Shown: positions 5,867-57,467 of the stretch, one piece after another
How positions within the stretch are numbered: position 1 is the first letter of the stretch
Layout: each line of letters starts with the position of its first letter
Assembly: GCF_006345805.1 (NCBI RefSeq)
Contig: NW_021833077.1
Location: 20,737-84,736, forward strand
Direction: 5' to 3'
From: Octopus sinensis
Lineage: Eukaryota
Length of the DNA: 64,000 nt
Made by a program: the position numbers and the translations under genes
The notes under the pieces: model-generated
What the model saw: the letters and a program-made list of their open reading frames with translations, nothing else
Databases searched by the model: none
What the model was told of the DNA's origin: nothing

Positions 5867-6651
5867 TATTTTTACTACCCACAAGGGGCTACACACAGAG
5901 GGAACAAACCAGGACAAACAAATGGATTAAGTCGATTATATCGATCCAGTGCATAACTGGTACATATTTAATTGACCCCAAAAGGATGAAAGGCAAAGTC
6001 GACCTCGGTGGAATTCGAACTCAGAACGTAGCGGCAGACGAAATACCTATTCCTTTACTACCTACAAGAGGCTAAACATAGAGGGGACAAACCAGGACAA
6101 ACAAATGGATTAAGTCGATTATATCGACCCAGTGCATAACTGGTACATATTTAATTGACCCCAAAAGGATGAAAGGCAAAGTCGACCTCGGTGTAATTTG
6201 AACTCAGAACGTAGCGGCAGACGAAATACCTATTCCTTTACTACCTACAAGAGGCTAAACATAGAGTGGACAAACAAGGACAGACAAGGGGATTAAGTCG
6301 ATTACATCGACACCAGTACGTAACTGGTACTTATTTAATCGACCTCGAAAAGATGAAAGGCAAAGTCGACCTCGGCGGAATTTGAACTCAGAACGTAACG
6401 ACAGACGAAATACCTATTTCTATTTCTTTATTACCCACAAGGGGCTAAACATAGAGGGGACAAACATGGACAGACATAGGTATTAAGTCGATTATATCGA
6501 CCCCAGTGCTTAACTGGTACTTAATTTATCGACCCCGAAAGGATGAAAGGTAGAGTCGGCCTCGGCGGAATTTGAGCTCACAACGTAACGGCAGACGAAA
6601 TACTGCTAAGCATTTCGTCCGGCGTGCTAACGTTTCTGCCAGCTCGCCGCC
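5867..6651 (-). mobile_element. SINE family B, head plus 4 tandem ~184-bp units
   Basis: Head GGCGGCGAGCTGGCAGAAACGTTAGCACG is read on the minus strand from 6651. Four repeats of the GAGTTCAAATTCC...GACTTTGCCTTTCATCCTTTCGGGGTCGAT body follow. No clear TSD. Confidence 0.9.
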
Positions 6652-7049
6652 TTCATATACATATTTGTTTATGTTTCTCTCTTTCTGTGAGTGTGTGTTC
6701 TTGTGCATGTCCATGTATATATATATCAAAGAGAAGCTGAAAGAAATAAAGATGAAGAAAACGAAAAAAGAATGAAAAGATGACAAAAGAAAGAAGTAAA
6801 AATAAAAGAGGAAAGAAAAACGAAGAAAGGCAGAGGGGAATAGAGCGATGTACGTAGTAATTCTTGCTTATAATTGGTTATGCAATTAAGAAGCATATGT
6901 TTCCTGGTTTAGTCCCATGCCGTGACATTTTGGCCAAGTATTTACTACGTTAGGCTCGGTTTTATCAATATCTTCAGAGTGAAATTTGATATCGCAAGAC
7001 GTTGCACGAACATCTCGCATATCGTCTGTATTTCATGCATGCGCCCTCC

Positions 7050-7460
7050 CGTGTGTATATCTTCTATCTTTTACTTGTTGCAATGACTGCACTGCAGCTA
7101 TACTTGGGAACCGACTTCATGGGTTTAGTCAAGCAAATCCACCCCAGTAGTAATTTTTAAATCTGACACCTATTCTTTTGGTCACTTAGAGGCAAAACCT
7201 CTAAGATACAGGCGCGTAAAGAAACAACACTGGTAGACAGGCGGTAGGGAAACAAAGAGAAGCATAGAAATACATACTAACACAAATGCACACACACGCA
7301 CGCTAACACTCACACGCACACACACCTATGCACACGCAGATGTTTGTGTGTTTGTAGGATTGGTTGTGTGGTAAGAGGCTTGCTTCTCTACCACATGGTT
7401 CCGTGTTCAGTGTCACTGCGTGGCACCTTGCGTGTCTTCTACTATAGCCTCGGGCCGACC
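7050..7460. mobile_element. Two diverged SINE family A-like fragments in opposite orientations
   Basis: A 3' half on minus (~7050-7260), a CA-rich spacer, then a 5' head on plus (~7350-7460: GTGTGGTAAG...GTGGCACCTTG...GCCTCGGGCCGACC). Confidence 0.65.
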
Positions 7461-7583
7461 TTATATATATATATCTATATATTTATATCTGTAAATATAA
7501 ATATAAATATAAATAAATATCTGTAAATATAAACCATCTAATTTTCTGTGTACCTCATTTCTTCTAATATATATATATATTAT

Positions 7584-7629
<46 letters not shown>

Positions 7630-7631
7630 GG

Positions 7632-7711
<80 letters not shown>

Positions 7712-7746
7712 CAATATATATATATATATATAATATATATACATAT

Positions 7747-7792
<46 letters not shown>

Positions 7793-7806
7793 TATATAGT
7801 TAATCC

Positions 7807-9618: not shown

Positions 9619-9868
9619 CATATATATATATATATACATAAACATAATATTATATATAATTACATATATACTTATATTTACATATGTATTACTTATATTT
9701 AGATGTATATACATACATATGTGTGTGTATAAATATATGTATATATATATATATATGATATAAATACTCACATATATATGTATATATATACATAAGTACA
9801 TATATATGTGGTGGGGTGTATATATACTTATATATATATGCATATATATATCATATATATATATATAT

Positions 9869-9935
<67 letters not shown>

Positions 9936-10504
9936 ATATATGCACATACACACATACATACATATGTGTGAGGAGAAGAGTGTACGTGTGTGTGTCTGTG
10001 TGTATGTCATTATGTATGCATCTGTATACACGAGTTCGAGCGTGTTTGTATGTGGTGGTATATATTGGACTTAAAATCATGGTAAACCTTACAAAAAGCA
10101 AGTCCAGGTGAGAGAAAAGAAACGCACACACACACACGTAAGTAACTTATCAGTCGTGCTAGATATGGCTTACTCCTCCGAATGCCTATCCAGTGCTGAC
10201 AGCTAATTAACTTTACGCACACGTTCTTTTATGTGTTTGCAATGCTTTATACACACACACACATACATACATACATACATACATACATACTCATACATAC
10301 ATACATACTTACATACATACATATATACATACTTACATACATACTTACATAATACATACATACATACATACATACTACATACATACATACATACATACAT
10401 ACATACATACACGCACGCATACAAGGCAGCAAACCCTGTCTGGTAAATTCGTTCGGGAATCGCTGATATAAATAGGGCTAATCCGTTCCAATGTAACGTC
10501 CCGA

Positions 10505-10789: not shown

Positions 10790-11123
10790 ACACACACACA
10801 CAAACAAACACACACTCACACTCGCACACACATATATGTATGTATGTATATAGATACGGACACAATGAGTTAGTGATTACGGGTGCTTATGCTGTGTGTT
10901 GTAAGACGACTGGGAGTGACGCACATTTTAACAATTGTTAAAGCATGTTTTGGAGTCTCTTGTGTCTGTTAATGAGGGTCTTTGCGATCATGGGCAGCTG
11001 TTTACCTCAGACTTTGTTTGAAACATGCACTATTGACTACAATATTCTAATCGTCATATTCGCTTAGTCAATCAACGAACTGAAACTCATGAGTTCACGC
11101 ATGTTTGCATATATATACATACA

Positions 11124-11186
<63 letters not shown>

Positions 11187-11201
11187 TGGATATATATATA
11201 C

Positions 11202-11248
<47 letters not shown>

Positions 11249-11304
11249 AATATACATACATATACATATATATATATATATACACAATATACATATACAT
11301 ATAC

Positions 11305-11349
<45 letters not shown>

Positions 11350-11557
11350 GATATATATAATTATATATATTATATATATATATATAACAAATATACATAT
11401 ATTTAGATTTATATATATTTTTTTCTAGTTGCAGCTCAGAGCTGCGGCCATGCTGATGCACTGCCGTTTTGTGCTACACTGTTATTACGACGATCCTCGT
11501 CTAATATGTGGCACTTAGTGAAGAATGGAGTTTGATATAGCTGCTCTCATAAAAAAA

Positions 11558-11740
11558 GTTAGCACGCCGGGCGGAATGCTTAGTATTTCGTTTGTTTTTA
11601 AGTTCTGGGTTAAAATTCCGCCGAGGTCGACTTTTCCTTTCATCCTTTCGAGGTCGATAAATTAAGTACCAGTTGCGTACAGGGGTCTATCTAATCCACT
11701 GGCTCCCTCCCACAAAATTGTGCCTAGAGTAGAAAAAATT
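11558..11740 (+). mobile_element. SINE family B variant with alternative tail (...GTGCCTAGAGTAGAAAA)
   Basis: B head and core followed by the same tail type as the last unit at 48474-48643. Confidence 0.75.
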
Positions 11741-12119
11741 TTAACAACTTTTCGAGCCGGATAAGACATATGGTGTAATGATATGAGGACGACATCACAT
11801 TCCTGCTTTCCTACGTTTATTTCGGTTACGTACGTATAGAAAGAGAACTTCAGTTCGATTTGCAATCTTCGTTATGCGAATGCTACTCGTGAAATATATT
11901 AAAAGTAAACCAGGGCAATAAAGTGTTTTAAAAAATGGAACACGTCTTTTTTTTATCAAGAAAAAAAAATGTTCGTACAGTTCAAAATATATGCGAGCGT
12001 CATTGCGAAGAGGTTTAAGTGAATAATGAGGTTAACGTAAAGAAGAGTAATATATATATTTATATGTGTGTGTGTGTGTGTGTGTGTGTTGTGTGTGTGT
12101 GTGTTGTGTGTAACATTGT

Positions 12120-13008: not shown

Positions 13009-13397
13009 TTTACTTGTGTCAGTGATTTGACTGTGGCCATGCTGGAGCACTGCATTTAGTCGAGCAAATCGACCCCAGGACTTATTCTTTGTAAGCCTTG
13101 TACTTATTCTATCGGTCTCTTTTGCCGAACCGCTAAGTTACAGGGATGTAAACACACCAGCATCGGTTGTCAAGTGATGTTAGGAGAGGGGGCAAACACA
13201 GGCAAACAAACATATCCACACACATACATATATACAAAGGGCTTCTTTCAGTTTCCGTCTACCAAATCCACTCACAAGGCTTTGGTCGGCGCGAGGCTAT
13301 AGTAGAAGACACTTGCCCAAGGTGCTACGCAGTAGGACTGAACCCGGAACTATGTGGTTGGTAACCAAGCTACTTACCACACAGTCACTCCTACGCC
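13009..13397 (-). mobile_element. tRNA-derived SINE, family A (full length)
   Basis: Head GGCGYAGGAGTGGCTGTGTGGTAAG, B box GGTTCAGTCC, CORE-like GGCACCTTGGGCAAGTGTCTT, internal TA/TG tract, tail AAACAAGTAAAAGAG. Confidence 0.9.

Positions 13398-15470: not shown

Positions 15471-15472
<2 letters not shown>
14923..15472 (-). mobile_element. 550-bp non-coding element embedded in (TAA)n
   Basis: Reverse complement of 60826-61374 and 61408-61955. Both ends abut TAA repeats. Confidence 0.85.
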
Positions 15473-15507
<35 letters not shown>

Positions 15508-15598
15508 TATTATTATTATTATTATTAATTATTATTAATTATTATTATTATTATTATTTATTATTATTGATTATTATTATTATTATTATTATTATTAT

Positions 15599-15631
<33 letters not shown>

Positions 15632-15639
15632 TATTATTA

Positions 15640-17128
15640 TTCCTTTATAACACAGTGTAGATAAAAATGTACCGGAGTCTTTAGTTATCTGTCAAGTCAC
15701 AACAAGGACCTCAGATAGATAATACTTTCCTAAGATGTGCGCTGTGCCCAATAAGGCTGGTTTTTGCAAGACTTCAATCTTGCATGGGATTTCCAGTTGC
15801 CTTAAGAAGTCTTGAAGGTTCAATATGATTGAACCCAACGCTCCGATCACCACTGGTATCACTTTTACATTACCCTTTCGCATTCCATATAGTCTTGCCA
15901 TTTCAATTTTCAATTCGAAACACTTGGTGATATTTTTCAACCATTTGGTATGGCTACAGCAATGATCTGACAGTATTTGTCTCTCTTATTCAAGATGACA
16001 ATATCCAGCCGACGGTGTTCCATCCTTCTGAAAATCATTGTCCCAGAGTATAGTTACTTTTCTATCCACCTGCATGACTTTACTTAGTACATGCTCATAC
16101 CAGTTCTCTGTTATTTCATACTGGTATTTACGACATAAGGGCCAATGAAGATACACACGCATTTTATCGTGGCGGCGCTTGTATTCTTTCTGTGCAAGGT
16201 TCTCACATCCACTTACCAAGTGGGTCACATTTTCCACACTCTTTCCACAGAGTTTGTATTTCTGGGTGTCAGAAGTTTTATAGATATTATACTTCACTGA
16301 ATTGGTAGCGAGAGCCTTATTTTGTGCAGCAATGATCTGGCTTTCGGTGGTACACCTGAAATCACCTTGCTCAAGCTATGCCCACGATGCTGTATTATCC
16401 TTAACGTCTTGTGTATTCCTTTCAAACTGTCCATGCATTCTAATTTCAAGGTCTTTTCTCTTCTCCTCAACTCTTTGGTTAAACTCTTCCTTGCCTACCT
16501 TTTCATCTGCATTTACACCCATATATTTCGTGGCATATTGCAGCAGGTCTTCATCACTATTTATCAAATACTCGGCAAGCGTTCTCCTTTCACTCCTTAT
16601 ACAATGGTCCATACTAATTAGTCCTCTGCTACCATTCTTTCTTTTCATATACAGTCTGTTTACGTTTGCTTTAGGGTGTAGTGCCCCATGCAGTGTCATC
16701 AACTTTCTCATCCTTTTACTCAGTGTTGATATTTCCTCCTCAGGCCATTTAAGGATGGACGCACTATATCTGACCACCGCAACCGCCCAGATATTCATTA
16801 CGGTAATCAAATTTTTGGCATCCAGGTTGAATTTCAACACCATCTTCATCCTTTTTTGATACCACTCGCTGACCTTGATTTTCATTTCTCTGTGTAGAAT
16901 GTCATCCAGCTCCAAAATCCTTAAATATCTATACCCACTACCGTCGGGTTCACCCATGGTCTCTCCTGATGGTAACCGAAATCCTCTGCAAGCTGCTTTC
17001 TTCCCTCTTTTTATATTAAGTACTAAGCATTTGGTAATCCCGAATTCCATACCGACGTCCCTACCACACTTCCAGACTGTTTTGGTTAAGGAATGTATCT
17101 TTCTATCTCTTTGTGTACATAGGAACAT
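15640..17128 (-). mobile_element. R4/Dong-clade non-LTR retrotransposon, 3' part (RT end, CCHC finger, restriction-like endonuclease), frameshifted
   Basis: Motifs DVGMEFGITKC, YRYL.ILE, N.WAVAVVRYSA, HGALHPKANVNRLYMKRKNGSRGL, MHGQF, TESQIIAAQ, C..ENVTHLVSGC..LAQKEYKRRHD, LWD, VIPVVIGALG, LQK.ALLGTAHIL. A short 3' UTR ends in (AAT)n at 15473-15640. Confidence 0.9.
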
Positions 17129-17388: not shown

Positions 17389-17982
17389 GGCTTCAAATTT
17401 TGGCGCAAAGCAAGTAATCATGAGGGGTGGAGTTGAGTCAATTATATCGCCCCAGTACTTGACTAGTACTTTATTGTATTGACCACGAAGGGATGAAATG
17501 CAAAGTCGGCCTCGGTGTAATTTGAACTCAGAACGTAAAGAGATATACCGGTAAGCATTTCGTCCTACCTACTAACGATTCTTATTTCTTTATTGCACAC
17601 AAGGGGCTAAACATAGAGGGGACAAACAAGGACAGTCAAAGGGATTAAATCAATTACATCGACCCCAGTGCGTAACTGGTACTTTATTTATCGACCCCGA
17701 AAGGATGAAAGGCAAAGTTGACCTCGGCGGAATTTGAACTCAGAACGTAACGGTAAGACGAAATACTTCTTTCTTTACTGCCCACAAGGGGCTAAACACA
17801 GAGAGGACAAACAAGGACAGACAAACGGATTAAGTCGATTATATCGACCCCAGTGCGTAACTGGTACTTATTTAATCGACTACGAAAGGATGAAAGGCAA
17901 AGTCGACCTCGGCGGAATTTGAACTCAGAACGTAACGGCAGACGAAATACCGCTAAGCATCTAACGTTTCTGCCAACTCGCC
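17389..17982 (-). mobile_element. SINE family B, head plus 3 units (last unit with a different, diverged tail)
   Basis: Repeated ATCGACCCCGAAAGGATGAAAGGCAAAGT at ~17480, 17690 and 17875. Confidence 0.85.
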
Positions 17983-18920
17983 TACCTACTAACTATTCTG
18001 CCCGCTCAACACCTTTTAATCCGAGAGTATTATAGATTAAAATACCCTAGGCATGGGTACAACAACACATAAATGAATGCATTAGCTAAGAACGAACCCT
18101 CGGCGTCACTGATTGAATGTATAATGAAACTCGGTCAACTATCGATCTGACAGCTACAAAAATATTTTTTTCCCACCTAACTCAACAAGGACCAAATACT
18201 ATTTCAAATTATACAAAAGATTAAAGCGGAGAAGGTAAAATTTCAACAAGCGCACACAATAGCATTTAGCAAGCAACAATTAAGGACCCAATGCAACGTG
18301 ACTGATTCTATCAAGCAGAAGCAGGTTTTTAAAAATAGATCCACTGAACAAAATGAAATTTTACTAGAAAAACAAGTACCGACAGTAAACAGGAGTGCAG
18401 CAATAAATATTGCGATAAAAGAGAACAGTATATTATTTCGTGTGTATGTGTAAGTTTTTTGTGTATGGGTTGAATAGTGCTCGATTTGGAAGAAACAAGA
18501 GGAAAAGCTGAGAGCATATTTTTAAGTAGATGTGTCATTGGGGGTGAGAAAGTAAAATATCAGTTCAAAAAGATCATTCTGTGTTAAACAAAACAACTAT
18601 TTCCAGATGGCATTTATATAGCGATACCATACCTGATAAGGCGGGTAAACAAGTATGTATTTAGATATGCATATATGTATGTTAGTATGTGCGTGTGAGT
18701 GTGTGCTCATACACACAAACATATATATATATATATATATACACACACGCGCGCGCGCGCACACACATATATATATATATATACACACACATACATACAC
18801 ACACGCACACATATATGTACCCACACACATAGACACGTGTATGTATGTATCTATGGGTGTATATATATATATATTATATATATATATATATACACATATA
18901 TATGTGTGTGTGTGTGTGTA

Positions 18921-19264
18921 TCTCTTTTATTCTTTTATTTGTTGCAGTCATTTGACTGTGGCCATGTTGGAGCACCGCCTTTAGTCGAGCAAATCGACCA
19001 CAGAATTTATTCTTTGGAAGCCTAGTATTTATTCTATCGGTCTCTTTTTGCCGAACCGCTATGTTACGGGGATATATATATATACATACATATATATATA
19101 TATACATATATACGACGGGCTTCTTTCAGTTTCCGTCTACCAAATCCACTTACAAAGCTTTGGTCGATCCGAGGCTATAGTAGAGGACACTTGCCCAAGG
19201 TGCCACGCAGTGGGACTGAACTCGGAACCATGTGGTTCGTAAGCAAGCTTCTTACCACACAGCC
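18921..19264 (-). mobile_element. SINE family A
   Basis: Matches the 13009 copy. Confidence 0.85.
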
Positions 19265-19670
19265 AAATCCATATACAGTGTATAAGGATGAAAATGATAA
19301 CGACCCTTCTTGTGTCATATAGACTCATAGGGCTGGTTTCCCTTTTTGTGGGGTAACGTGAAATGAAGTGTTTTCCTCAAGGGTACAAAGCGTCAATAGG
19401 TCCGGGAATACGAAACAAGAATCTTCCAGGTTCGATGATTTTGCGAATCTTACATTATGTACAAACTCTATACTTGGAATGACCAATTGTAAATACTGTT
19501 GGATTTTACTCATAAGGTATTGGAATATTATATGTATACCATTCTGCCTTAAAAAATGGTTCTACAAATTCAATATCCCTACATATCTCACATCTATTTT
19601 CTTTCCTCCGCCTCACTCTCTATTTTGTATCCCATCTAAATTAACTATTTCTTAACCATTCTCTCACACC

Positions 19671-19722
19671 GTCTCTGATGAAGGGATATAATTAATAAAT
19701 ATCCTGGAAACAGCTGTAAGAC
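19671..19722 (+). ncRNA. Minimal type-I hammerhead ribozyme motif with canonical CUGAUGA core
   Basis: GTCT-CTGATGA-A-GGGATAT-(AATTAATAA)-ATATCCT-G-GAAA-CAGCTG-TA-AGAC. Stem I GTCT/AGAC, palindromic stem III ACAGCTGT, GUA triplet, predicted cut after 19718. Confidence 0.7.
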
Positions 19723-19810
19723 TTTCTATCTATAAATGTTCGAATATCTACACAACCTTGGGGTTTTTTATCTTATTACTCAAAAAATTCTTATATATAA
19801 TGATCCCCGA

Positions 19811-20410
19811 GGCGGCGAACTGGCAGAAGCGTTAGCGCGCTGGGCGAAATGCTTAGCGGTATTTCGTCTGTCGTTACGTTCTGAGTTCAAATTCCTCCGA
19901 GGTCGACTTTGCCTTTCATCCTTTCGGGGTCGATAAATTAAGTACCAGTTACGCACTGGGGTTGTTGTAATCAACTTAATCCCTTTGTCTGTCCTTGTTT
20001 GTCCCCTCTGTGTTTAGCCCCTTGTGGGTAATAAAGAAATAGGTATTTCGTCTGTCGTTACGTTCTGAGTTCAAATTCCGCCGAAGTCGACTTTGCCTTT
20101 CATCCTTTCGGGGTCGATAAATTAAGTACCAGTTACGCACTGGGGTCGATGTAATCGACTTAATACCCATGTCTGCCCTTGTTTGTCCCCTCTGTGTTTA
20201 GACCATTGTGGGTAATAAAGAAATAGGTATTTCGTCTGTCGTTACGTTCTGAGTTCAAATTCCGCCGAGGTCGACTTTGCCTTTCATCCTTTCGGGGTCG
20301 ATAAATTAAGTACCAGTTACGCACTGGGGTTGATGTAATCAACTTAATCCCTTTGTCTGTCTTTGTTTGTCCCCCTCTGTGTTTAGCCCCTTGTGGGCAG
20401 TAAAGAAATA
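19811..20410 (+). mobile_element. SINE family B trimer with ~20-bp TSD
   Basis: Units start at 19858, 20042 and 20226 (184 bp). ATATATAATGATCCCCGAGG at 19793-19812 and 20408-20427. Confidence 0.92.
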
Positions 20411-20756
20411 TATAATGATCCCCGAGGGAAATATATCAGATATTCTACAATGACCATGTTTCCTGTGGTACATTGATACATTGTACCAAATAGCTGGCGA
20501 AAAGCAAATGAGCACAATGATTAAAAAAAAAAAAATGCCGACTGATATGGATTGGTCACCAGCTGCAACAACAACTCAATGAATGCTATTGACACTGTCT
20601 GCCGCTTAAGATGCTACAAAGTGGAAAGCGCGAGAGGAAATGACCAAGAACGACTTACCACCGCATGATTCGTGCAGTCTGCAGGGTTTCGCTCAATGAA
20701 ACACTTCAAACGGCTGAAGCTGGTAATAAGCGGAAAGTCTTAATAAATTATGTCTG

Positions 20757-20980
20757 AGCTGGCAGAAACGTTAGTGCGCCGGGCGAAATGCGTAGCCGTA
20801 TTTCGTCTGTCGTTACGTTCTGAGTTCAAATTCCGCCGAGGTCGACTTTGCCTTTCATCCTTTCGGGGTCGATAAATGAAGTACCAGTTACGCAATGGGG
20901 TCGATGTAATCGACTCAATCCCTTTGTCTGTCCTTGTTTGTCCCCTCTATGTTTAGCCCCTTGTGGGTAGTAAAGAAATA
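20757..20980 (+). mobile_element. SINE family B monomer
   Basis: Head plus one unit. TATGTCTG at 20749-20756 and 20981-20988. Confidence 0.9.
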
Positions 20981-22804: not shown

Positions 22805-22998
22805 ATATAATATATATATATATATATACTATATACGACAGTTTTCTTTCAGTTTCCGTCTACCAAATCCACTCACAAGGCATTGGTCGGCCCGGGGCTA
22901 TAGCAGAAGACACTTGCCCAAGATGCCACGCAGTGGGACTGAACGCGGAACCATGTGGTTGGTTAGCAAGCTACTTACCACACAGCCACTCCTGCGCC
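22549..22998 (-). mobile_element. SINE family A with expanded internal (TA)n
   Basis: Full head and tail, with a ~90-bp TA tract at the internal site. Confidence 0.9.
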
Positions 22999-31708: not shown

Positions 31709-31869
31709 GGCGCAGGAGTGGCTGTGTGGTAAGTAGCTTGCTTACCAACCACATGGTTCCGGGCTCAGTCACACTGCGTGGTACCTTCAGCAAATGTCTT
31801 CTACTATAGCCTCGGGCCGACCAAAGCCTTGTGTGTTGATTTGGTAGAAGGAAACTGAAAGAAGCCCGT

Positions 31870-32595: not shown

Positions 32596-32998
32596 GCGCA
32601 GGAGTGGCTGTGTGGTGAGTAGTTTGCTTACCAACCACATGATTCCGGGTTCATTCCCACTGCGTGGCACCATGGACAAGTGTCTTCTACTATAGCCTCA
32701 GGCCGACCAAAGCCTTATGAGTGGATTTGGTAGACGGAAACTGGAAGAAGCCCGTCGTATATATGTATATATGAGTGTGTATATGTTTGTGTGTCTGTGA
32801 TTGTCCCGCAACCATTGCTTGACAACCGATGCTGGTGTGTTTACCTGCCCGTAACTTAGCGGTTCAGCAAAATAGACCGATGGAATAAGTACTAGGCTTA
32901 CAAAGAATAAGTCCTGGGGGCGATTTACTCGACTAAAGGCGGTGCTCCAGCATGGCCGCAGTCAAATAGCTGAAAGAAGTAAAAGAGTAAAGAGAGTA
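32596..32998 (+). mobile_element. SINE family A
   Basis: Full head-to-tail match. Confidence 0.9.
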
Positions 32999-34579: not shown

Positions 34580-34960
34580 GTTATAGACCCCGAAAAGATG
34601 AAAGACAAGGTCAACCTAAGCGGATTTTGAACTCAGAGCACTTCCAGTCAGAATACATACACGAAGCATCCTGTCGGACACTACCTATTTCTTTACTACC
34701 CACAAGGGGCTAAACACAGAGGGGACAAACAAGGACAGACAAAGGGATTAAGTCGATTGCATCGACCCCAGTGCGTAACTGGCACTTAATGTATCGACCC
34801 CGAAAGGATGAAAGGCAAAGTCGACCTCGGCGGAATTTGAACTCAGAATGTAACGGCAGACGAAATGCGGCTACGTATTTCGCCCGGCGTGCTAACGTTT
34901 CTGCCAGCTCGCCGCCTTCCTGTCGGATACTACCTGACAACTCTGCCAATTCGCCACCTG
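34580..34960 (-). mobile_element. Young family B monomer (34687-34917) nested in an older B-like copy
   Basis: TSD TCCTGTCGGA(C/T)ACTACCT at 34669-34686 and 34918-34935. Old-copy core lies to the left and old-copy head (CTGCCAATTCGCCACC) to the right. Confidence 0.85.
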
Positions 34961-36414: not shown

Positions 36415-36681
36415 GCTTGACAACCGATGCTGGTGTGTTTACGTTCCCGTAACTTAGCGGTTCGGCAAAACAAACCGATAGAATAAGTACTAAGCTTACA
36501 AAGAATAAGTCCTGGGGTCGATTTGCTCGACTAAAAGGCCGTGCTCCAGCATAGCCACAATCAAATGACTGAAACAAGTACAAGAGTACAAGAGGAGTGG
36601 CTGTGTGGTAAATAGCTTGTTTACCAACCACATGGTTGTGGGTTCAGTCCCACTGCGTGGCACCTTGGGCAAGTGTCTTCT
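36415..36681 (+). mobile_element. SINE family A in permuted order (3' half, then 5' head)
   Basis: GCTTGACAACCGATG...AAACAAGTACAAGAGTACAAG is directly followed by AGGAGTGGCTGTGTGGTAA...GGCAAGTGTCTTC. Confidence 0.85.
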
Positions 36682-37027: not shown

Positions 37028-37129
37028 AGTCGGCGAGACATGCTGTCACCAAACTTCAGGTTAATTATCTCTGCTAACTAAATTACCGTGTAATGGCAAC
37101 TGTGCAATAATAATAATAACACTAGCAGA

Positions 37130-37570
<441 letters not shown>

Positions 37571-38261: not shown

Positions 38262-38570
38262 GGCGCAGGAGTGGCTGTGTGGTAAGTAGCTTGCTAACCA
38301 GCCACATGGTTCCGGGTTCAGTCCCACTGCGTGGAACCTTGGGCAAGTACAAACTGAAAGAAGCCCGTCGTATATATGTATATATATATATATGTGTGTG
38401 CGTGTATGTTTGTCTTTGTTCCCCTAGCATTGCTTGACAACCGATGCTGGTGTGTTACTTAGCGGTTCGGCAAAAGAGACCGATAGAATAAGTACTGGGG
38501 TCGAGTTGCTCGATTAAAGGCGGTGCTCCAGCATGGCCGCAGTCAAATGACTGAAACAAGTAAAAGAGTA
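38262..38570 (+). mobile_element. SINE family A with internal deletions
   Basis: Head and tail present. Segments after GGCAAGT and within the 3' half are missing. Confidence 0.85.
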
Positions 38571-39352: not shown

Positions 39353-39555
39353 GGCGTAGGAGTGGCTGTGGTAAGTAGCTTGCTTACCAACCACTTTGTT
39401 CCGGGTTCAGTCCCATTGCGTGGCACCTTGGGCAAGTGTCTTCTACTGTAGCCTCGGGCCGACCAAAGCCTTGTGAGCGGATTTGGTAGACGGAAACTGA
39501 AAGAAGCCCGTCGTATATATATATATATATATATATGTGAGTGTGTGTGTGTGCG

Positions 39556-41320: not shown

Positions 41321-41704
41321 TCTTTCTTCATACTTCTGCCACAAAGCAGAGGAACACGGTGTAACCCACTATGGTATGGTAAACTTTCAGACCCTAGTCT
41401 AGATTGCGAATCCTCTGTATCCCAGGATGGTTCAGCTCGCTACCCGTTAAAAGCCACCGTTTACGGAATGAGGATAACAACGTAGCTTTCGCGCCCGGGC
41501 AACCGCTAGTCTATTGGGTGTGGTGGGTGGATCTTCAAGTTGCCACACACATTCTTTGTAGCTTAGAGTAGGCTCGAATTAGAGATTATTCTTTGTGGCT
41601 AATGGCGTGAGTCCTGATTGAAAGAAGAAGAAGAAGAAGAAGAAGAAGAAGAAAAAGAAGAAGAAGACAGCAGCAGCATCAACAACATTAATAATAATCC
41701 TTTC

Positions 41705-41900
41705 TATTATAGGCATAAGGCCCGAAATTTGGGTGGAGGGCTTAAGTCAATTACATCGACCCAGTATTGAATTGGTACTTAATTTTTCGATCCCGAAAGG
41801 ATGAAACGCAAAGTCGAGTTTGGTGGAATTTGAACTCAGAACGTAGCGACTGGCGAAATAGCGCTAAATATATCGTTCAGGTTTTGCCAGCTCGCTGCCT
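41705..41900 (-). mobile_element. Diverged family B-like SINE
   Basis: GATCCCGAAAGGATGAAACGCAAAGTCGAG...TTTGAACTCAGAACG...CTGCC head. Confidence 0.75.
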
Positions 41901-42810
41901 CAATAACAACAGCAGCAACAACAACAACAACAGCAAGTTGATGATTAAAAAGAAGGAGGACGAGGGGAAGATGAAGAAGATGATGAAGATGAAGGAGGAG
42001 GAAGAAGAGAAGAAGGCGAAGTATTAATATTAGTAGTAGTAGGAAGAGGTAGGAAAATAAGGCAAACGAAAATATAGTGTGTCAAAAAAAATAGTGTTTT
42101 GTCTCTCTTCTACTGAGCAAGTTTATCTGATCCAAAGGATTCTGTACGATACTGCGTTACCGACAACCACATATCGCAGCTGTTGTTGTTCGTGTTAAAA
42201 CTAACACTTTGATGTTGTTGTTATCAATGATGATGATAATGATGATGATGATGAAGATGATTGTCGTTGATAGATGTTGTAGTGGTGAGGATAAAAGTTC
42301 ATATTAGTGATGCTGATAATGATGATGGGGATGGTGACGATGATGATCAGGGTGACGGTGGTGGTCTTGGTTGTGATGGCGTTGAAGACGAGGGCTGTAA
42401 CGATAATTATATAGGACGATGATTATTACGTTGATGATATTAATAACGATGATGATGAGGAGGAGGACGAGGAGGAGGAAGTGGAGTCGAAGGGGATGAT
42501 AATGATGGTAATGATGATAACGACATTAATAATATTTTTGATCTAGATGGTGTTGGCATTTTCGAATGCGGAGGGGTGCGATGGCGGCGTTGAACGTTTT
42601 GGTAGAGCGGGTTTGGTGGTGGTAACAGTGGTGGTGGAGGTGATGGTGACGGTGGTAACATTTCTATGTTTTCAAGTGTAATAAGAGAAGAAAGGATTAC
42701 AACTTATGACGTTTTTGTTTTATTATTTTTGGTTACTACAAGACTGGTACCTGAAGGTTGTAGTTTTTCCCAGAATGCTGAATATACAACAATTCATGAA
42801 TGACTCGTTA

Positions 42811-45580: not shown

Positions 45581-46227
45581 TACATCATCCCCTATCTCTT
45601 ACTCTACATTATCGTCTTCTCTACAATATTACATATTTTCTAGGTTGATTGCCACCAAATGTTCTACGGCAGACATCTTGAATTGTTTTGCCTGGGGGCC
45701 ATCTATCTAAAGATGGGAACATCTGAACATCATAAACCTCGAGATATTCCTCTAACATACATTGACCTGTGGCTGTAATGAATATCTTGGCTAAATTACG
45801 TATGCATACATGTATGTATGTATGTATGTATGTATGTATGTATGTATGTATGTATGTATGTATGTACGTACGTACGTACGTACGTACGTATGTATGTATG
45901 TATGTATGTATGCATGCACGAATGTATGTATGTTTGTACGTATATATGTATGTTTGTTTGTGTGTTTGTATGTATATTAGAGTGGCCCCCACTTTTCAAC
46001 TTTCTAAAAGTTTAGCTCCCACCCCTAATCTTGTCCCAATTAACAAAAAGACAATGTATGCAAAATTTTAACTCAGTCGAACAACTGCAAGGCGACCCTC
46101 ATCGACCATGAAATTTTGAAGTTTTCACCTAGAAAATCATTTTTGCAGATAAAGGGTTATCTCTTATTCCGTTTTCTCTTAAATTAAAAACTTGTTCAGT
46201 ATTATTCATGGTAATAGAAGGATAAAA

Positions 46228-46642
46228 GGCGGCGAGCTGGCAGAAACGTTAGCACGCCGGGCGAAATGCTTAGCGGTATTTCGTCTGCCGTTACGATGTG
46301 AGTTCAAATTCCGCCGAGGTCGACTTTGCCTTTCATCCTTTCGGGGTCGATAAATTAAGTACCAGTTACGCACTGGGGTCGATGTAATCGACTTAATACC
46401 TATGTCTGTCCTTGTTTGTCCCCTCTGTGTTTAGCCCCTTGTGGGTAATAAAGAAATAGGTATTTCGCCTGTCTTTACGTTCTGAGATCAAATTCTGCCG
46501 AGGTTGACTTTACCTTTCATCCTATCAGGGTCGATTATATAAGTACCAGTTACGCACTGGGGTCGATATAATCGACTTAATCCGTTTGTCTGTCCTTGTT
46601 TATCCTCTCTGTGTTTAACCCCTTGTGGGTAATAAAGAATTA
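46228..46642 (+). mobile_element. SINE family B dimer with ~12-bp TSD
   Basis: Head plus 2 units. GGTAATAGAAGG at 46210-46221 and 46643-46654. Confidence 0.9.
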
Positions 46643-47137
46643 GGTAATAGAAGGGTAAGTGACAATAAATATAACGGAGAAGGCAACTTGCAAAGCTAGG
46701 GACAGAGCGTAGGTATAGGGCAAACACTTATTTTCCGCAGTCATCCAGTCGGCGGCCACCCGTAAGCGAGTGAGGTTGTGAATTGCTTTTGTCCATTGAA
46801 AGAATTGTACTGCACCTAATATTAGTGTTGAGAAATAGAATATTAAGAAATATACGTTAGTGATAAACAGTGTACTAATATGACTTGTCCGCGTTTGTAA
46901 ATTTAATTTTATTTATTTATAATAACTTGTAAGCACTCATTCACTTTGTTGTGACGCATTATGATATAGATCTTTCTCTGTTGTGGTGGAAGTCCTGACA
47001 AAATTTATAACCTCTCCATTTTTATAATGTTATGTGCTTTGTATACTTATTATCAATGCCTTTGAACAAAATTTAGAGAGGCGTGGCACACACAAATACT
47101 GCACAAATGACTGGTATGTAAATCACTGGTATGTAAA

Positions 47138-47367
47138 GGCGGCGAGCTGGCAGAAACGTTAGCACGCCGGGCGAAATGCATAGCTGTATTTCGTCAGCTG
47201 TTACGTTCTGAGTTCAAATTCCGCCGGGGTCGACTTTGCCTTTCATCCTTTCGGGGTCGATAACTTAAGTACCAGTTGCGCAATGGGGTCGATGTAATCG
47301 ACGTAATCCGTTGTCTGTCCTTGTTTGTCCCTTCTGTGTTTAGCCCCTTGTGGGTAGTAAAGAAATA
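47138..47367 (+). mobile_element. SINE family B monomer
   Basis: Head plus one unit, ending AAAGAAATAGGTAT. Confidence 0.9.
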
Positions 47368-47654: not shown

Positions 47655-48000
47655 TTTCGAGGTCGATAAATTAAGTAGCAGATACGCACTGGGGTCGATG
47701 TAATCGACTTAGTCCCTTTGTCTGTGCTTGTTTTCCCCCTCCATGTTTGGCCCCCTGTGGGCAATAAAGAAATAAGAATAGTTCTCATGCCGAGTGAAAT
47801 GGGTAGCGACATTTCATCCGTCTTCACGTTCTGGGTTCAAATTCCACTGAGGTTGACTTTACCTGTCAATAAAGCAAATACCTGTTGAGCACTGGATCGA
47901 TGAAATAAGAACCAGCTGAGCACTACGAGGTGGGATTCGATGTAATCGACTGACCCCCATCCCCTAAACTTGCTGGCCTTGTGCCAAAATTTGAAACCAA
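47655..48000 (+). mobile_element. Truncated/diverged family B-like fragments
   Basis: GGTCGATAAATTAAGTAG at 47660 and a second degenerate copy at ~47790-48000. Confidence 0.7.
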
Positions 48001-48072
48001 TATTGATGTATCATCTAAATAAAAACGTTGCGTTGAAGCTGTTTTCTTAGATATTCTTATTACTCTAAATCT

Positions 48073-48643
48073 GGCAGAACTTTTAGCACGCCTGGCGAAA
48101 TCAGCGGTATTTCGTCTGCCGCTACGTTCTGAGTTCAAATTCTGCCGAGGTCGACTTTGCATTTCATCCTTTTGGGGTCGATTAAATACGTACCAGTTAC
48201 GCACTGGGTCGATATAATCGACTGAATCCGTTCGTCTGTCCTTGTTTGTCCTCTCTGTGTTTAGCCCCTTGTGGGTAGTAAAGAAATAGGTATTTCGTCT
48301 GCCGCTACGTTATGAGTTCAAATACTGCCGAAGTCGACTTTGCCTTTCATCCTTTTGGGGGTCGATTAAATACGTACCAGTTGCGCACTGGGGTCGATAT
48401 AATCGACTGAATCCGTTCGTCTGTCCTTGTTTGTCCTCTCTGTGTTTAGCCCCTTGTGGGTAGTAAAGAAACAGGTATTTCGTCCGTCTTTACGTTCTGA
48501 GTTCAAATTCCGCTGAAGTCGACTTTGCTGTTCATCCATTCGGGGTCGATAAATTAAGTACCAGTTGCATACTGGGATCAATCTAATCGACTGGTCCCCT
48601 CCCCTCAAAATTTCGGACATCGTGCCTAGAGTAGAAAAGATTA
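48073..48643 (+). mobile_element. Chimeric SINE family B trimer with 16-bp TSD
   Basis: Units at 48106, 48289 and 48474, the last with a different tail. TTATTACTCTAAATCT at 48057-48072 and 48644-48659. Confidence 0.9.
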
Positions 48644-49282
48644 TTATTACTCTAAATCTTAAAGGAAATGCTCTCATTCCTGCAGCAATACTTTTTATTC
48701 TGTTCCAAATAAGCATACTATGTTTGCTGTGTTGGCATTTTGCGGAAGTTGAATTGAAATGTATCGCCAATATTCTTTGTGTTGCAGAGTACGGATATTC
48801 TTAACTTCAGAAATAGTTTCCATATTTGTCTCCAAGCAGTCGGTCAACGGATACCACCGTATATTATTTTAACAGAAAACCTAGGGCGCATATGGTTGTA
48901 ATATTTTGATGACATTGTATGTATATATGATGTATGTATGTATGTATGTATGTATGTATGTATGTATGTATGTATGTATGTATGTATGTATGTATGTATG
49001 TATGTATGCAGGAATAACTGTATCTCTCTTTCACTTTTTCTCTTTGTATATATATATGTATGTGGGAGATGTACATGGGTGTATATAAATACATGTGTGT
49101 GTATATATATACATACATACATGTATGCACACATACATACATATATACATACATACATTCATACATACATATATATGCATATGCGTGTGTGTGTATATAC
49201 ATATATGTATATATATTCTTTTCTTCCTTCATTCTTTTACTCGAGCACTGCCTTTCAGTGCTTTTGGATCTGCCTTCTGAAC

Positions 49283-53684: not shown

Positions 53685-53720
53685 TATATATATATATATA
53701 TATATATATAGATATATATA

Positions 53721-54939: not shown

Positions 54940-55505
54940 TCAAATTTTAGCACAAGACCAGCAATTTTGGTGTTGGAGGTCAATCGATTAAATCGACTCG
55001 TACTTATTTTATCTTTTCCAAAAGGGATGAAAGGCAAAATCGACCTCGGCGGAATTTGAACTCAGAACGTAAAGGCGGACTCAATTGTCTATGTATATTG
55101 CCATATTGTATATATTTCTTTATTTCCCACAAGGGCCTAAACATAGAGGGGACAAACAAGGACAGACAAAGAGATAACATCGGCCCCAGTGCGAAACTAG
55201 TACCTTATTTATCGACCCCGAAGGATGAACGGCAAAGTCGACCTCGGCGAAATTTGAACTCAGAACGTAACGACAGACGAAATACCTATTTCTTTACTGC
55301 CCACAGAAGCTACACACAGAGGGGACAAATAAAGACAGACAAACGGATTAAGTCGATTACACCAACCCCAGTACGTAACTGGTACTTATTTAATGGATGA
55401 AAGGCAAAGTCGACATCGGCGGAATTTGAACTCAGAACGTAACGGCAGACGAAATAGGGCTACGCATTTCGCCCGGCGTGCTAACGTTTCTGCCAGCACG
55501 CCGCT
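54940..55505 (-). mobile_element. SINE family B, head plus 2 units and an adjoining diverged unit
   Basis: Head ends CTGCCAGCACGCCGC at ~55504. Junction GACGAAATACCTATTTCTTTAC at ~55280. Confidence 0.85.
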
Positions 55506-56501
55506 TTATATTGTCATATTGTATATTAATCTATTGGAGAACAATGGTTTCAAACTTTGAAACAACTAAAACATAGATTTCCGAGCAAGGTTATAATTTG
55601 TAAAATCGAAGGGCATGATTTGGAGAGTATGTATTTTGCTGACATCATTGGGATTTGATTCAAAACTTGAAAGAAAAAGAAAATATTACGTAACTTAGTG
55701 CAACGAACCAGTAATTAGTCTGTTGAAAGCCTTTCGCGTTAATAAACCCAAATTGCAAGCAATGAAAAAGCAAAGAAAAAGGAAGCATTTTAGGCTGAAC
55801 TTAACTTTTTGAATAATAATGAAAGAAAAGTCTTCGTAAAAAAAAAAGCTTTTCACGCACATGGTCTTCGTCTAAACAAGAAAACCCCAAAACGTTGTTA
55901 ATTTGAAATTGGACAGTTTCTGCTCTTTATTTTTTTTTATTTTCTCGGTAGGGTTTGAAAGAACGGGAAGATTTAACAATGTTTTACTAAGATCAAACTA
56001 CGGCAGCAGAACAAACTTCACCCGTAACACTAACAACCCCCCCCCAAATAATCGGCACGCATGCCTTTACCACCTCCACCTCCACCCCCACCAACCATCG
56101 CCCCCGATATCATTGCCAAGTCTATCTTCGTCGTAACGAACTCGCATCTGCTTTAAGCAAGTTGGCTTGCTGTGTAGCTTCGCTCTTTGAATAAATACTG
56201 ACATACGTAGACAGACACTCAAGCAAGCGTGTGCATGCGTGTGTATATACGTATCCATATGTGTGTGTGTGTCTGTATGTATTATATATATATATATATA
56301 TATACATATATATATTATACACTATATATATACATATATATATACATATATATACATATATATATACATATATATACATATATATATATATGTATATATA
56401 TATATATGTATGTGTATATATATGTATATATATGTATAATATTATATATTATATATATATATATATATTATATATATATATATATAGTATATGTATTAAT
56501 G

Positions 56502-56657: not shown

Positions 56658-56862
56658 TACATACGTACACACACACAAGCGCGAGAATCTTACGGTTTGC
56701 ACTTTTAGCTGGGTAGCAATAAGTGCAGCGACTGAATTTGGTTAATTGGTAGAAGAAAACATAAAATGGCAAAAATAAAAACAAGATAACTTTTATATTT
56801 ACAAGAACTTCCAGATAAAGAACTGGCAAGTATCGATACCATATTTGTTTACTGGTAAATAC

Positions 56863-57467
56863 GGCGGCGAGCTTGGCAGAATCGTTAGCACACCGGGCAA
56901 AATGCGTAACCGTATTTCGTCTGCCGTTACGTCCTGAGTTCAAATTCCGCCGAGGTCGACTTTGCCTTTCATCCTTTCGGGGTCGATAAATTAAGTACCA
57001 GTTACGCACTGGGGTCGATATAATCGACTTGCTCCGTTTGTCTGTCCTTGTTTGTCCTCTCTGTGTCCAGCCCCTTGTGGGTAGTGTAGTAAAGAAATAG
57101 TTATTTTGTCTGTCGTTACGTTCTGTGTTCAAATTCCGCCGAGGTCGACTTTGCCTTTCATCCTTTCGGGGTCGATAAATTAAGTACCAGTTTCGCACTG
57201 GGGTCGACGTCATCGACTTAATCCCTTTGTCTGTCCTTGTTTGTTCCCCCTGTGTTTAGCCCCTTGTAGGTAGTAAAGAAATAGGTATTTCGTCTGTCGT
57301 TACGTTCTGAGTTCAAATTCCGCCGAGATCGACTTTGCCTTTCAACCTTTCCGGGTCGATAAATAAAGTACCAGTTTCGCACTGAGGTCGATGTAATCGA
57401 CTTAATCCCTTTGTCTGTCCTTGTTTGTCCCCTTTATGTTTAGCCCCTTGTGGGTAATAAAGAAATA
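56863..57467 (+). mobile_element. SINE family B trimer with 21-bp TSD
   Basis: Units at ~56911, 57100 and 57284. CATATTTGTTTACTGGTAAAT at 56840-56860 and 57468-57488. Confidence 0.92.

What the first reader, a model, noticed from the sequence alone, without database searches (positions are those of the whole stretch)
19793..20427. SINE that appears to insert as a multimer: one head, three 184-bp bodies, one 20-bp TSD
Seen: one tRNA-like head is followed by three bodies starting at 19858, 20042 and 20226. The whole trimer is bracketed by ATATATAATGATCCCCGAGG on both sides, with no target sequence between units. Monomers, dimers, trimers and a tetramer of the same family occur across this window. 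Established: long TSDs are the signature of LINE-mediated target-primed reverse transcription. Inference: the multimer was copied in one event, from a concatemeric or circular RNA or by repeated template jumps. This would be a SINE that seeds satellite-like arrays.
Basis: partly seen in the sequence, partly recalled or inferred. Interest (0 to 1): 0.8.

Follow-up and report, generated by a model that had tools for sequence, protein, structure and literature searches.

The report
SINE family with tandem body units
A short retrotransposon (SINE) in this window usually carries two to four tandem 184-bp bodies behind one promoter head, and whole arrays seem to have been pasted in at once; similar arrays are already described in clams, so this is a good example of a known kind, not a new one.

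Summary
Window 19810-20410 holds one 47-nt head and three 184-bp units. An exact 20-bp direct repeat brackets it (19793-19812 and 20408-20427), and no target sequence lies between the units.

Ten complete family members sit in the window: 3 monomers, 3 dimers, 3 trimers and 1 tetramer. Six of the seven arrays have a single pair of 16-21 bp TSDs.

Units within an array are no more alike than units from different arrays (10.5% vs 10.9% divergence). Arrays are never monophyletic. The middle unit of this trimer shares two transversions only with units at two other loci. TSDs are far better preserved than the units' mutual divergence predicts (3 mismatches seen, about 11 expected; P about 0.004).

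This argues against growth in place from one inserted unit, and equally against rolling-circle or same-template copying. Arrays were heterogeneous when they formed.

All 17 internal junctions are identical: full tail AAAGAAATA joined to GGTATTTCG, the first base of the 3' arm of a covarying 13-bp hairpin. This fits a junction inherited from multi-unit source copies read through by RNA polymerase III. Three near-twin unit pairs show that local duplication also happens.

No array here exceeds four units, so satellite seeding is not shown. Clam SINE arrays published in 2024 have nearly the same anatomy.

The parts
19793..19812 (+). Upstream copy of the target-site duplication ATATATAATGATCCCCGAGG. 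Its last 3 nt (AGG) overlap the consensus head start.
   Evidence: Exact 20/20 match to 20408-20427, and the only two occurrences in the window.
19810..19857 (+). Single head of 47-48 nt, with an A-box-like TGGCAGAAGCG at 19821-19831. Positions 19841-19853 form the 5' arm of a 13-bp hairpin, and 19854-19857 (TAGC) form its loop.
   Evidence: 92% identical to the family head consensus. Hairpin from the fold. The closing pair covaries across 10 elements (GC:4, UG:3, AU:1, UA:1, none unpaired). No tRNA call from ARAGORN or Rfam.
19858..20041 (+). Unit 1 (184 bp). It has the 3' arm of the hairpin at 19858-19870 (GGTATTTCGTCTG, which contains TATTT), a B-box-like GAGTTCAAATTCC at 19883-19895, and a tail hairpin GCCC-CTTGT-GGGT at 20017-20029. 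It ends in AAAGAAATA.
   Evidence: Its nearest relative is unit 3 (2.7%).
20042..20225 (+). Unit 2 (184 bp), from a different unit lineage. It shares C132A and T136A only with E1u1 and E9u1.
   Evidence: Its nearest relative is E9u1 (4.3%), against 6.0-6.5% to units 1 and 3. Shared variants.
20226..20410 (+). Unit 3 (185 bp), a near-twin of unit 1. Both carry the compensatory C-G to U-A change in the GTCGAT-GTA-ATCGAC hairpin. Its last 3 nt overlap the TSD.
20408..20427 (+). Downstream copy of the target-site duplication.
56862..57467 (+). E14: head plus 3 units, a second trimer. Perfect 21-bp TSD CATATTTGTTTACTGGTAAAT at 56840-56860 and 57468-57488.
   Evidence: Its units differ from each other by 9-13%.
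48071..48649 (+). E12: 5'-truncated head, two near-twin B-type units, then a core of the related A1 subfamily with its own tail ending in ATT repeats. One TSD, TTATTACTCTAAATCT, at 48057-48072 and 48644-48659.
46227..46642 (+). E9: head plus 2 units. TSD GGTAATAGAAGGRTAA (15/16) at 46210-46225 and 46643-46658.
   Evidence: The units are 12% apart.
55113..55506 (-). E13: head plus 2 units. TSD ATATACAATATGRCAATATA (19/20) at 55507-55526 and 55094-55113.
   Evidence: The units are 17% apart.
17583..17985 (-). E3: head plus 2 units, inserted into the head of an older related SINE. TSD 18/19, at 17981-17999 and 17564-17582.
5871..6652 (-). E1: head plus 4 units (tetramer). No recognisable TSD. Units 3 and 4 are near-twins.
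20756..20980 (+). E5: monomer with a 5'-truncated head and a TSD of about 8-12 bp.
34686..34917 (-). E6: monomer inserted into the head of an older related SINE in the same orientation. TSD 17/18, starting with GGTA.
47137..47367 (+). E10: monomer. TSD of about 9 bp, starting with GGTATG.

Best explanation
This is a LINE-dependent, probably RNA polymerase III-transcribed SINE family. Its members have one 47-nt head (A-box-like) followed by a variable number (1-4 here) of a 184-bp module. Each module contains the B-box-like motif, the body and the complete 3' tail.

The head-less junction (tail AAAGAAATA joined to GGTATTTCG) most likely arose once or a few times. It was then inherited by multi-unit source copies whose units diverged and were reshuffled by unequal exchange.

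The units contain no run of four or more T, so transcripts started at the head can read through several units. The whole multi-unit RNA is then copied by a partner LINE through target-primed reverse transcription, which gives a single TSD pair around the array.

TATTT at the start of every unit is a leaky pol III terminator in mammalian systems. It may set where transcripts end, and so how many units a daughter copy gets.

Shown: the anatomy, the TSDs, the heterogeneity of units and the identical junctions. Inferred: pol III transcription, read-through, multi-unit source loci and the role of the terminator.
For: 1. Single TSD pairs flank 6 of 7 arrays: 20/20, 21/21, 16/16, 15/16, 19/20 and 18/19. 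Each TSD sequence is found only at its two sites.
2. All 17 internal junctions join the full tail end to the same base, and every array has exactly one head.
3. Mean within-array distance is 10.5% and mean between-array distance is 10.9% (permutation p=0.26). Arrays are monophyletic in 0-6% of bootstraps.
4. If the units of an array had been identical at or after insertion, 11.2-11.6 TSD mismatches would be expected in 106 bp. Three are seen (Poisson P=0.003-0.004).
5. E4 unit 2 shares two non-CpG transversions only with E1u1 and E9u1.
6. E3, E13 and E14 share the same order of unit types: alpha-like first, beta-like last. Parallel distances (17-22) are smaller than crossed distances (23-30).
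7. Nested insertions that can be recognised as new events (E3, E6) carry their own head and their own TSD and hit other head positions. De novo self-insertion therefore does not reproduce the canonical junction.
8. The consensus unit and E4 have no T4 run. TATTT terminated 42-50% of pol III transcripts in published assays (PMC8466645). Three of 9 TSDs start with GGTA, the first bases after each tail inside an array (P=1.6e-6).
Against: There are only 21 units from one 64-kb window, and no second genome or orthologous locus.

For E4 alone the TSD test is not significant (P=0.26).

There is no global first-versus-last positional signal (rank 66 of 128), so conserved unit order holds only for a subset of arrays.

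The hybrid E12 (two B-type units in front of an A1-type core and tail) and the mismatch between head type II and alpha-type first units in E13 and E14 need an extra recombination step in a source copy. They are explained more directly by stepwise addition or by template switching.

Singleton counts are uneven in E9 (1 vs 10) and E3 (3 vs 7).

No source locus, no transcript and no partner LINE was identified. The tRNA origin is not confirmed. E1 has no TSD.
Confidence: 0.5

Rival explanations
1. Stepwise self-insertion. New SINE copies insert at the GGTA site at the start of a resident unit. The 7-21 nt TSD is then identical to the incoming cDNA, so the top strand primes second-strand synthesis in register. 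One head-less unit is added per event, and the original outer TSD is kept.
For: Three of 9 TSDs start with GGTA, the same four bases that follow every internal junction (P=1.6e-6). New copies clearly favour resident related SINEs in the same orientation: E3 and E6 lie inside older heads, and E11, E13 and E14 lie within about 10-50 bp of older copies. This model explains mosaic arrays and the hybrid E12 directly. In E13 and E14 the type II head matches the last unit, which resembles the type II monomers, rather than the first unit. E9 and E3 have more singletons in the last unit.
Against: Only about 19 of 346 GGTA sites in the window are unit starts, yet 17 of 27 units would have to be secondary additions. 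Recognisable nested insertions hit other head positions and keep their own heads, but no array has an internal partial head. In the type II arrays the resident unit should be preceded by C, but the internal junction has G. In E4 the outer units are near-twins and the last unit has the fewest private changes. A GGTAGT site in the tail is never used.
Confidence: 0.17
2. One insertion event with template jumps between different SINE RNAs. The LINE reverse transcriptase copies one RNA up to the hairpin loop at position 47/48, or to the 5' end of an RNA cut in that loop. It then jumps to the 3' end of another SINE RNA and continues, which chains units from different source genes.
For: Each junction joins a complete 3' end to the first base of the 3' arm of a conserved, covarying 13-bp hairpin. 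The units of one array belong to different lineages. The hybrid E12 has an A1-type tail and core at the 3' side, where reverse transcription would start. The metagenome scaffold L004 shows another B/A1 hybrid, joined at a different A/T-rich point.
Against: All 10 elements end with a head, and none is head-less at position 48, although 17 jumps from that position would be needed. In E13 and E14 the head type does not match the first unit as this model predicts. There is no microhomology between the cDNA end and the acceptor tail. The conserved alpha-to-beta order in E3, E13 and E14 is unexpected for random draws.
Confidence: 0.13
3. Ordinary post-insertion unequal crossover or replication slippage. 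Monomers, or at most dimers, were inserted, and arrays then grew in place.
For: There are three near-twin pairs within arrays: E12u1/u2 at 3.3% (bootstrap 99), E1u3/u4 at 7.1% (bootstrap 96) and E4u1/u3 at 2.7% (bootstrap 67). Their divergence is similar to that of the TSDs. This is the explanation favoured for SINE arrays in clams and squamates (PMC11481361, PMC10702118).
Against: As the sole cause it fails. The pooled TSD test gives P about 0.004. Arrays are not monophyletic. Independent first duplications would not give the same junction at seven loci. The a-c-a pattern in E4, with near-twins that are not adjacent, cannot come from a single unequal exchange. It probably does contribute to changes in unit number.
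Confidence: 0.1
4. Rolling-circle or circular-RNA template, or repeated re-copying of one RNA, produces concatemers in a single event.
For: One TSD pair per array, and no target sequence between units.
Against: It predicts units identical at insertion, but they differ by 6-17% and belong to lineages shared with other loci. The repeat unit omits the first 47 nt, so it is not a circle of the full transcript.
Confidence: 0.03

Closest known systems
TSD1-(SINE)n-TSD1 multimers of tRNA-derived SINEs in the blood clam Scapharca broughtonii (Mob DNA 2024, PMC11481361)
   Same: One TSD pair surrounds the whole array. The first unit has the complete head, and the following units are truncated in the head at one fixed position. 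The arrays are dispersed and short.
   Different: In the clam, internal units also lack part of the 3' tail and only the last unit is complete. Here every unit keeps the full tail end, except in the hybrid E12. The clam authors invoke unequal recombination. Here units are as diverged within arrays as between them, and 7 of 10 elements are multimers.
SINE-derived satellites (sSat) of squamate reptiles (Vassetzky et al. 2023, PMC10702118)
   Same: The tandem unit is a part of a SINE, with a longer terminal unit that reaches the SINE terminus. The unit length is near nucleosome size.
   Different: sSats reach up to about 1000 units, become homogenised and favour subtelomeres. Here there are at most 4 units, no homogenisation, and dispersed loci each with its own TSD.
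SINEs that amplify as dimers (Alu) and tandem multimers of whole SINEs (Dip, B2) (PMC10702118, PMC8466645)
   Same: A multi-monomer structure can be transcribed and retrotransposed as one element with one TSD pair.
   Different: Alu has a fixed dimer. Dip and B2 multimers consist of full-length units, each with its own head and tail. Here the unit number varies and only the first unit has a head.
SVA/LAVA-type composite retrotransposons with an internal VNTR, and Bov-A2 multimers of ruminants (from my own knowledge; not checked with the tools)
   Same: A non-autonomous, LINE-mobilised element that carries an internal tandem-repeat block whose copy number differs between copies.
   Different: SVA is a pol II-transcribed, polyadenylated composite with 35-50 bp VNTR units mobilised by L1. 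Here the repeat is the SINE's own body plus tail, and transcription is presumably by pol III.

Membership tests
tRNA-derived SINE (pol III-transcribed, LINE-dependent retroposon) | Head related to a tRNA, with internal A and B boxes | tested here: inconclusive
   The A-box-like TGGCAGAAACG matches 6 of 9 specified positions of TRGCNNAGTGG. The B-box-like AGTTCAAATTCC matches 7 of 9 with one extra base. The spacing is about 55 nt, and 5 of 7 acceptor pairs form (my reading). ARAGORN finds no tRNA, and Rfam gives no tRNA hit at E<=10.
tRNA-derived SINE (pol III-transcribed, LINE-dependent retroposon) | Direct target-site duplications of variable length, no terminal inverted repeats, and 5'-truncated copies | tested here: met
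   TSDs of 8-21 bp flank 9 of 10 elements. There is microhomology at the junctions. E5, E11 and E12 are 5'-truncated.
tRNA-derived SINE (pol III-transcribed, LINE-dependent retroposon) | 3' region shared with a partner LINE and/or a simple-repeat tail | tested here: inconclusive
   A conserved tail hairpin GCCC-CTTGT-GGGT is followed by AAAGAAATA, and the related A1 subfamily ends in ATT repeats. The tail module is found only next to SINE cores. The one LINE 3' end in the window shows no significant similarity.
tRNA-derived SINE (pol III-transcribed, LINE-dependent retroposon) | Transcription by RNA polymerase III | not testable with these tools
   Only indirect evidence: the box-like motifs and the absence of T4 runs in the units.
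TSD1-(SINE)n-TSD1 multimers (PMC11481361) | One TSD pair around the whole array and none between units | tested here: met
   True for E4, E14, E12, E9, E13 and E3. E1 has no recognisable TSD.
TSD1-(SINE)n-TSD1 multimers (PMC11481361) | Complete head only on the first unit, with later units truncated at one fixed head position | tested here: met
   All 17 internal junctions are at the same base, and each array has one head.
TSD1-(SINE)n-TSD1 multimers (PMC11481361) | Internal units also truncated in the 3' tail, with only the last unit complete | tested here: not met
   Internal units end in the same AAAGAAATA as terminal units. Only the hybrid E12 resembles this feature.
SINE-derived satellite (PMC10702118) | Long, homogenised arrays (tens to about 1000 units) | tested here: not met
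   The largest array has 4 units. Within-array divergence (10.5%) is about equal to between-array divergence (10.9%).
Fixed dimeric SINE (Alu type) | The same number of monomers in all copies | tested here: not met
   The window holds 3 monomers, 3 dimers, 3 trimers and 1 tetramer.
Rolling-circle or circular-RNA concatemer | Units of one array identical at insertion, and a junction that joins the 3' end to the 5' end of the whole RNA | tested here: not met
   Pooled TSD test P about 0.004. Variants are shared with other loci. The junction skips the first 47 nt.

The most novel reading that the evidence does not exclude
The retrotransposition machinery itself sets the unit number; genomic recombination does not. 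Each unit starts with GGTATTT, which is both a leaky pol III terminator (TATTT) and the 3' arm of a conserved hairpin. A multi-unit copy therefore carries its own terminator directly after every complete tail. It would release RNAs with 1, 2, 3 or more units that end in ...AAAUAGGUAUUU and prime on GGTA-containing targets. This would make multi-unit copies self-sufficient source genes wherever they land. It would also explain why multimers outnumber monomers and why new copies land next to resident ones.
Probability: 0.2. Interest if true: 0.7.

Novelty: new member of a known kind. Interest (0 to 1): 0.45.

Why it matters
Practical value: repeat annotation that counts each 184-bp unit as a separate insertion would inflate copy numbers here by nearly threefold (27 units in 10 elements). 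It would also distort age estimates, because most divergence between the units of an array predates the insertion.

Conceptual value: the window offers a clean small case in which TSD preservation and unit genealogy together separate 'array inserted as an array' from 'array grown in place'. That question was left open for clam and squamate SINE arrays.

If multi-unit copies really are the preferred source genes, the family would link SINE amplification to the birth of nucleosome-sized tandem repeats. A genome-wide census could test this directly.

Tried and rejected
1. Search for more copies outside the window. An exact 22-mer scan of metagenome contigs gave one chance hit (L001) and one 51-nt fragment at a contig end (L002). 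Scans of genome contigs and viral contigs gave nothing.
2. A protein route to the same genome. The LINE ORF at 16376-17128(-) has at best 50% identity to database proteins, and the contig of the best hit (L003) has no copy of the SINE. An antisense SINE-derived peptide found a single 543-bp metagenome scaffold (L004), which holds one hybrid copy.
3. tRNA recognition by ARAGORN and Rfam was negative. Pfam on three ORFs gave no hits.
4. A global test for first-unit versus last-unit clades showed no signal.
5. Partner LINE. The tail modules hit only SINE copies. The 3' end of the only LINE fragment shows no significant similarity (426 and 297 of 2000 shuffles score as well).
6. Naming the organism from the literature (octopus, penaeid shrimp, crab) gave nothing usable. 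One apparent 'SINE-rich' crab paper matched only because of the word 'sinensis'. The organism remains unknown.
7. A TSD for the tetramer E1 was not found.
8. Origin of the junction by GAAAT microhomology between head and tail was considered and rejected. The expected product would retain GCTTAGC, which the junction lacks.

Full report
OBSERVATION

Reading 19600-20650 and running TRF confirm a 184-bp period with 3.0 copies and 93% matches at 19858-20410. A roughly 47-nt segment that is not repeated precedes it.

The 20-mer ATATATAATGATCCCCGAGG lies at 19793-19812 and 20408-20427. These are its only two occurrences in the window, and identity stops at both of its ends. Both internal junctions read ...GGGTAATAAAGAAATA|GGTATTTCGTCTG..., with no target sequence between units.

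Comparison with other copies shows that the family head starts AGGCGGCG and the family tail ends AAAGAAATA. Three nucleotides at each end of the 20-mer therefore coincide with the ends of the element. The target contained the full 20-mer, and both junctions show 3-nt microhomology.

THE FAMILY IN THE WINDOW

BLAST with head, core and tail modules finds ten complete members:
- Monomers: E5 (20756-20980), E6 (34686-34917, minus strand), E10 (47137-47367).
- Dimers: E3 (17583-17985, minus), E9 (46227-46642), E13 (55113-55506, minus).
- Trimers: E4 (the finding), E14 (56862-57467), E12 (48071-48649).
- Tetramer: E1 (5871-6652, minus).

There are also a 5'-truncated copy (E11) and about a dozen older, related copies. 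Together the ten elements cover 7% of the window.

Every array has exactly one head. All 17 internal junctions join the complete tail end to the same base.

TSDs are as follows:
- E4: 20/20
- E14: 21/21
- E12: 16/16
- E9: 15/16
- E13: 19/20
- E3: 18/19
- E6: 17/18
- E5 and E10: about 8-12 bp
- E1: none recognisable

Variable TSD length, junction microhomology, 5' truncation and the absence of inverted ends are the marks of LINE-mediated target-primed reverse transcription (established knowledge).

ANATOMY

The head carries an A-box-like motif. The B-box-like motif GAGTTCAAATTCC lies inside every unit. ARAGORN and Rfam do not call a tRNA, so the tRNA origin is plausible but unconfirmed.

The first 97 nt fold with a 13-bp hairpin. 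Its 5' arm is the end of the head, its loop is TAGC, and its 3' arm begins exactly at the first base of the repeated unit. Across ten elements 93.7% of cells pair. The closing pair occurs as G-C (4), U-G (3), A-U (1) and U-A (1), and is never unpaired. Only 4 of 500 shuffles reach the observed number of double changes.

Two more hairpins show compensatory changes in near-twin units: GTCGAT-GTA-ATCGAC, and the tail hairpin GCCC-CTTGT-GGGT.

A related subfamily (A1) has a homologous tail that ends in ATT repeats.

The consensus unit has no run of four T, and E4 has none at all. Each unit does start with GGTATTT. In published mammalian assays TATTT terminated 42-50% of pol III transcripts (PMC8466645).

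GREW IN PLACE OR INSERTED AS AN ARRAY?

I aligned 21 full units and compared distances.
- Mean within-array distance is 10.5% and mean between-array distance is 10.9% (label permutation p=0.26).
- Only three pairs are each other's nearest relatives: E4u1/u3 (2.7%), E12u1/u2 (3.3%) and E1u3/u4 (7.1%).
- In 500 bootstraps the arrays E3, E9, E13 and E14 are never monophyletic, and E4 is monophyletic in 6%.
- E4 unit 2 groups with E1u1 and E9u1 (61%). It shares C132A and T136A with those two units and with no others.

If all units of an array descended from one unit after insertion, or were identical at insertion, the two TSD copies should have diverged at least as much as the units. That predicts 11.2-11.6 mismatches in 106 TSD positions. 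Three are seen (Poisson P=0.003-0.004, with or without CpG sites). For E4 alone the test has no power (P=0.26).

This result argues against pure in-place duplication. It argues equally against rolling-circle copying or re-copying of one template.

WHICH SOURCE?

Three models remain.

(a) Multi-unit source copies, read through and retrotransposed whole. In favour:
- The identical junction at seven loci.
- The absence of head-less arrays.
- The shared alpha-first, beta-last order in E3, E13 and E14.
- Recognisable nested insertions (E3, E6) carry their own head and TSD and use other head positions.
- In arrays with type II heads the first unit starts with C, as the hairpin requires, while internal units start with G.

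(b) Stepwise self-insertion at the GGTA site, with TSD-primed second-strand synthesis. In favour:
- Three of 9 TSDs start with GGTA (P=1.6e-6).
- New copies tend to sit in or just upstream of older related SINEs in the same orientation.
- The hybrid E12.

Against: the numbers are wrong. About 19 of 346 GGTA sites are unit starts, yet 17 of 27 units would have to be secondary additions.

(c) Jumps between different SINE RNAs at the hairpin. This fits the position of the junction and the hybrids E12 and L004. It does not explain why every array ends in a head.

I rank (a) first at about 0.5, with local duplication as an added process (the three near-twin pairs).

The GGTA-starting TSDs are also expected under (a) if transcripts end at the TATTT of the next unit and the GGUA extension anneals to the target. 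That step is inference.

COMPARISON WITH WHAT IS KNOWN

Arrays of the form TSD1-(SINE)n-TSD1 were described in the blood clam in 2024 (PMC11481361). There a full head is present only on the first unit, and the later units are head-truncated. The difference is that the clam's internal units also lack part of the tail.

Squamate SINE-derived satellites share the partial-SINE unit, but they are long and homogenised (PMC10702118). Dimeric SINEs such as Alu, and Dip and B2 multimers, show that multi-monomer SINEs can be mobilised or can accumulate.

I therefore class this as a new member of a known kind. The added points are the heterogeneity test and the hairpin/terminator position of the junction. 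No array exceeds four units, so satellite seeding is not demonstrated.

LIMITS

- All evidence comes from one 64-kb window of an unidentified organism (36.8% G+C, very rich in microsatellites).
- Attempts to obtain further copies failed, apart from two fragments.
- No transcript, source locus or partner LINE is known.
- No step had to be referred.

Noticed in passing
window 17564-17999, 34669-34935, 47655-47906, 54996-55113, 57468-57664: New copies of this SINE sit inside or within about 10-50 bp upstream of older related SINE copies, always in the same orientation. E3 and E6 lie in older heads. E11, E13 and E14 lie next to older cores. Both E3 and E11 abut the same older-head motif AGAATMGTT. 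Older copies cover only about 3-4% of the window, so this looks like targeting of resident SINEs.
   Followed up: partly
window 46210, 34935 (minus strand), 47127; compare the unit starts at 19858, 20042 and 20226: Three of nine TSDs begin with GGTA (GGTAAT, GGTAGT, GGTATG), the same bases that follow each tail inside arrays. The chance probability is 1.6e-6, given 346 GGTA sites in 128 kb of both strands. This is either a nick or priming preference, or annealing to an RNA that extends into the next unit.
   Followed up: partly
window 19841-19870, and the same region of the nine other elements: A 13-bp hairpin spans the head/unit boundary. Its closing pair shows four different standard pairs across ten copies. 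The two linked changes that define head type II (T>G and G>C) turn a U-G pair into a G-C pair.
   Followed up: yes
window 7361-7430, 13300-13383, 19178-19265, 22901-22989, 31718-31806, 32604-32692, 36597-36675, 38271-38341, 39367-39447, 50803-50869, 59566-59635 and others: A second, unrelated tRNA-like SINE family (core ...GGTTCCAGGTTCAGTCCCATCGCGTGGCAC...) has at least 15 copies in the window. It is also present on the 543-bp metagenome scaffold L004 next to a copy of the first family, so that scaffold is host DNA from the same or a closely related organism.
   Followed up: partly
window 11554-11745, 41689-41905, 48474-48649, 57518-57664; L004 374-467 (reverse strand): An older subfamily (A1) of the same SINE has a homologous but shorter tail that ends in ATT repeats. 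A further variant (A2) lies at 17436-17582 and 54996-55089. E12 and L004 are B/A1 hybrids joined at different points.
   Followed up: partly
window 15611-17128 (minus strand): A LINE fragment: a 250-aa ORF (16376-17128) with at best 50% identity to reverse-transcriptase-containing proteins from ENA assemblies and a coral, and no Pfam hit of its own. Its 3' end runs into a long AAT repeat (15472-15641). Its tail is not significantly similar to the SINE tails.
   Followed up: partly
window 6113-6230, 5930-6047, 48106-48408: Units E1u3, E1u4, E12u1 and E12u2 carry CCTTTTGGGG in place of CCTTTCGGGG. This creates a TTTT run, a pol III terminator, inside the unit. Such copies could not be read through.
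   Followed up: no
window 6415-6420 and 57085-57100: Two internal junctions carry an extra copy of the tail end (GAAATAGAAATAG in E1, AGTAAAGAAATAG in E14). This suggests that the terminal motif behaves as a short tail repeat.
   Followed up: no
whole window; for example 7567-7798, 9620-9941, 11109-11418, 37106-37569, 53685-54349: Microsatellite density is extreme: more than 150 TRF rows in 64 kb, mostly TA, AAT/ATT, ACAT and ATCT repeats of up to about 660 bp. There is also a 120-bp tandem repeat at 49417-49750.
   Followed up: no
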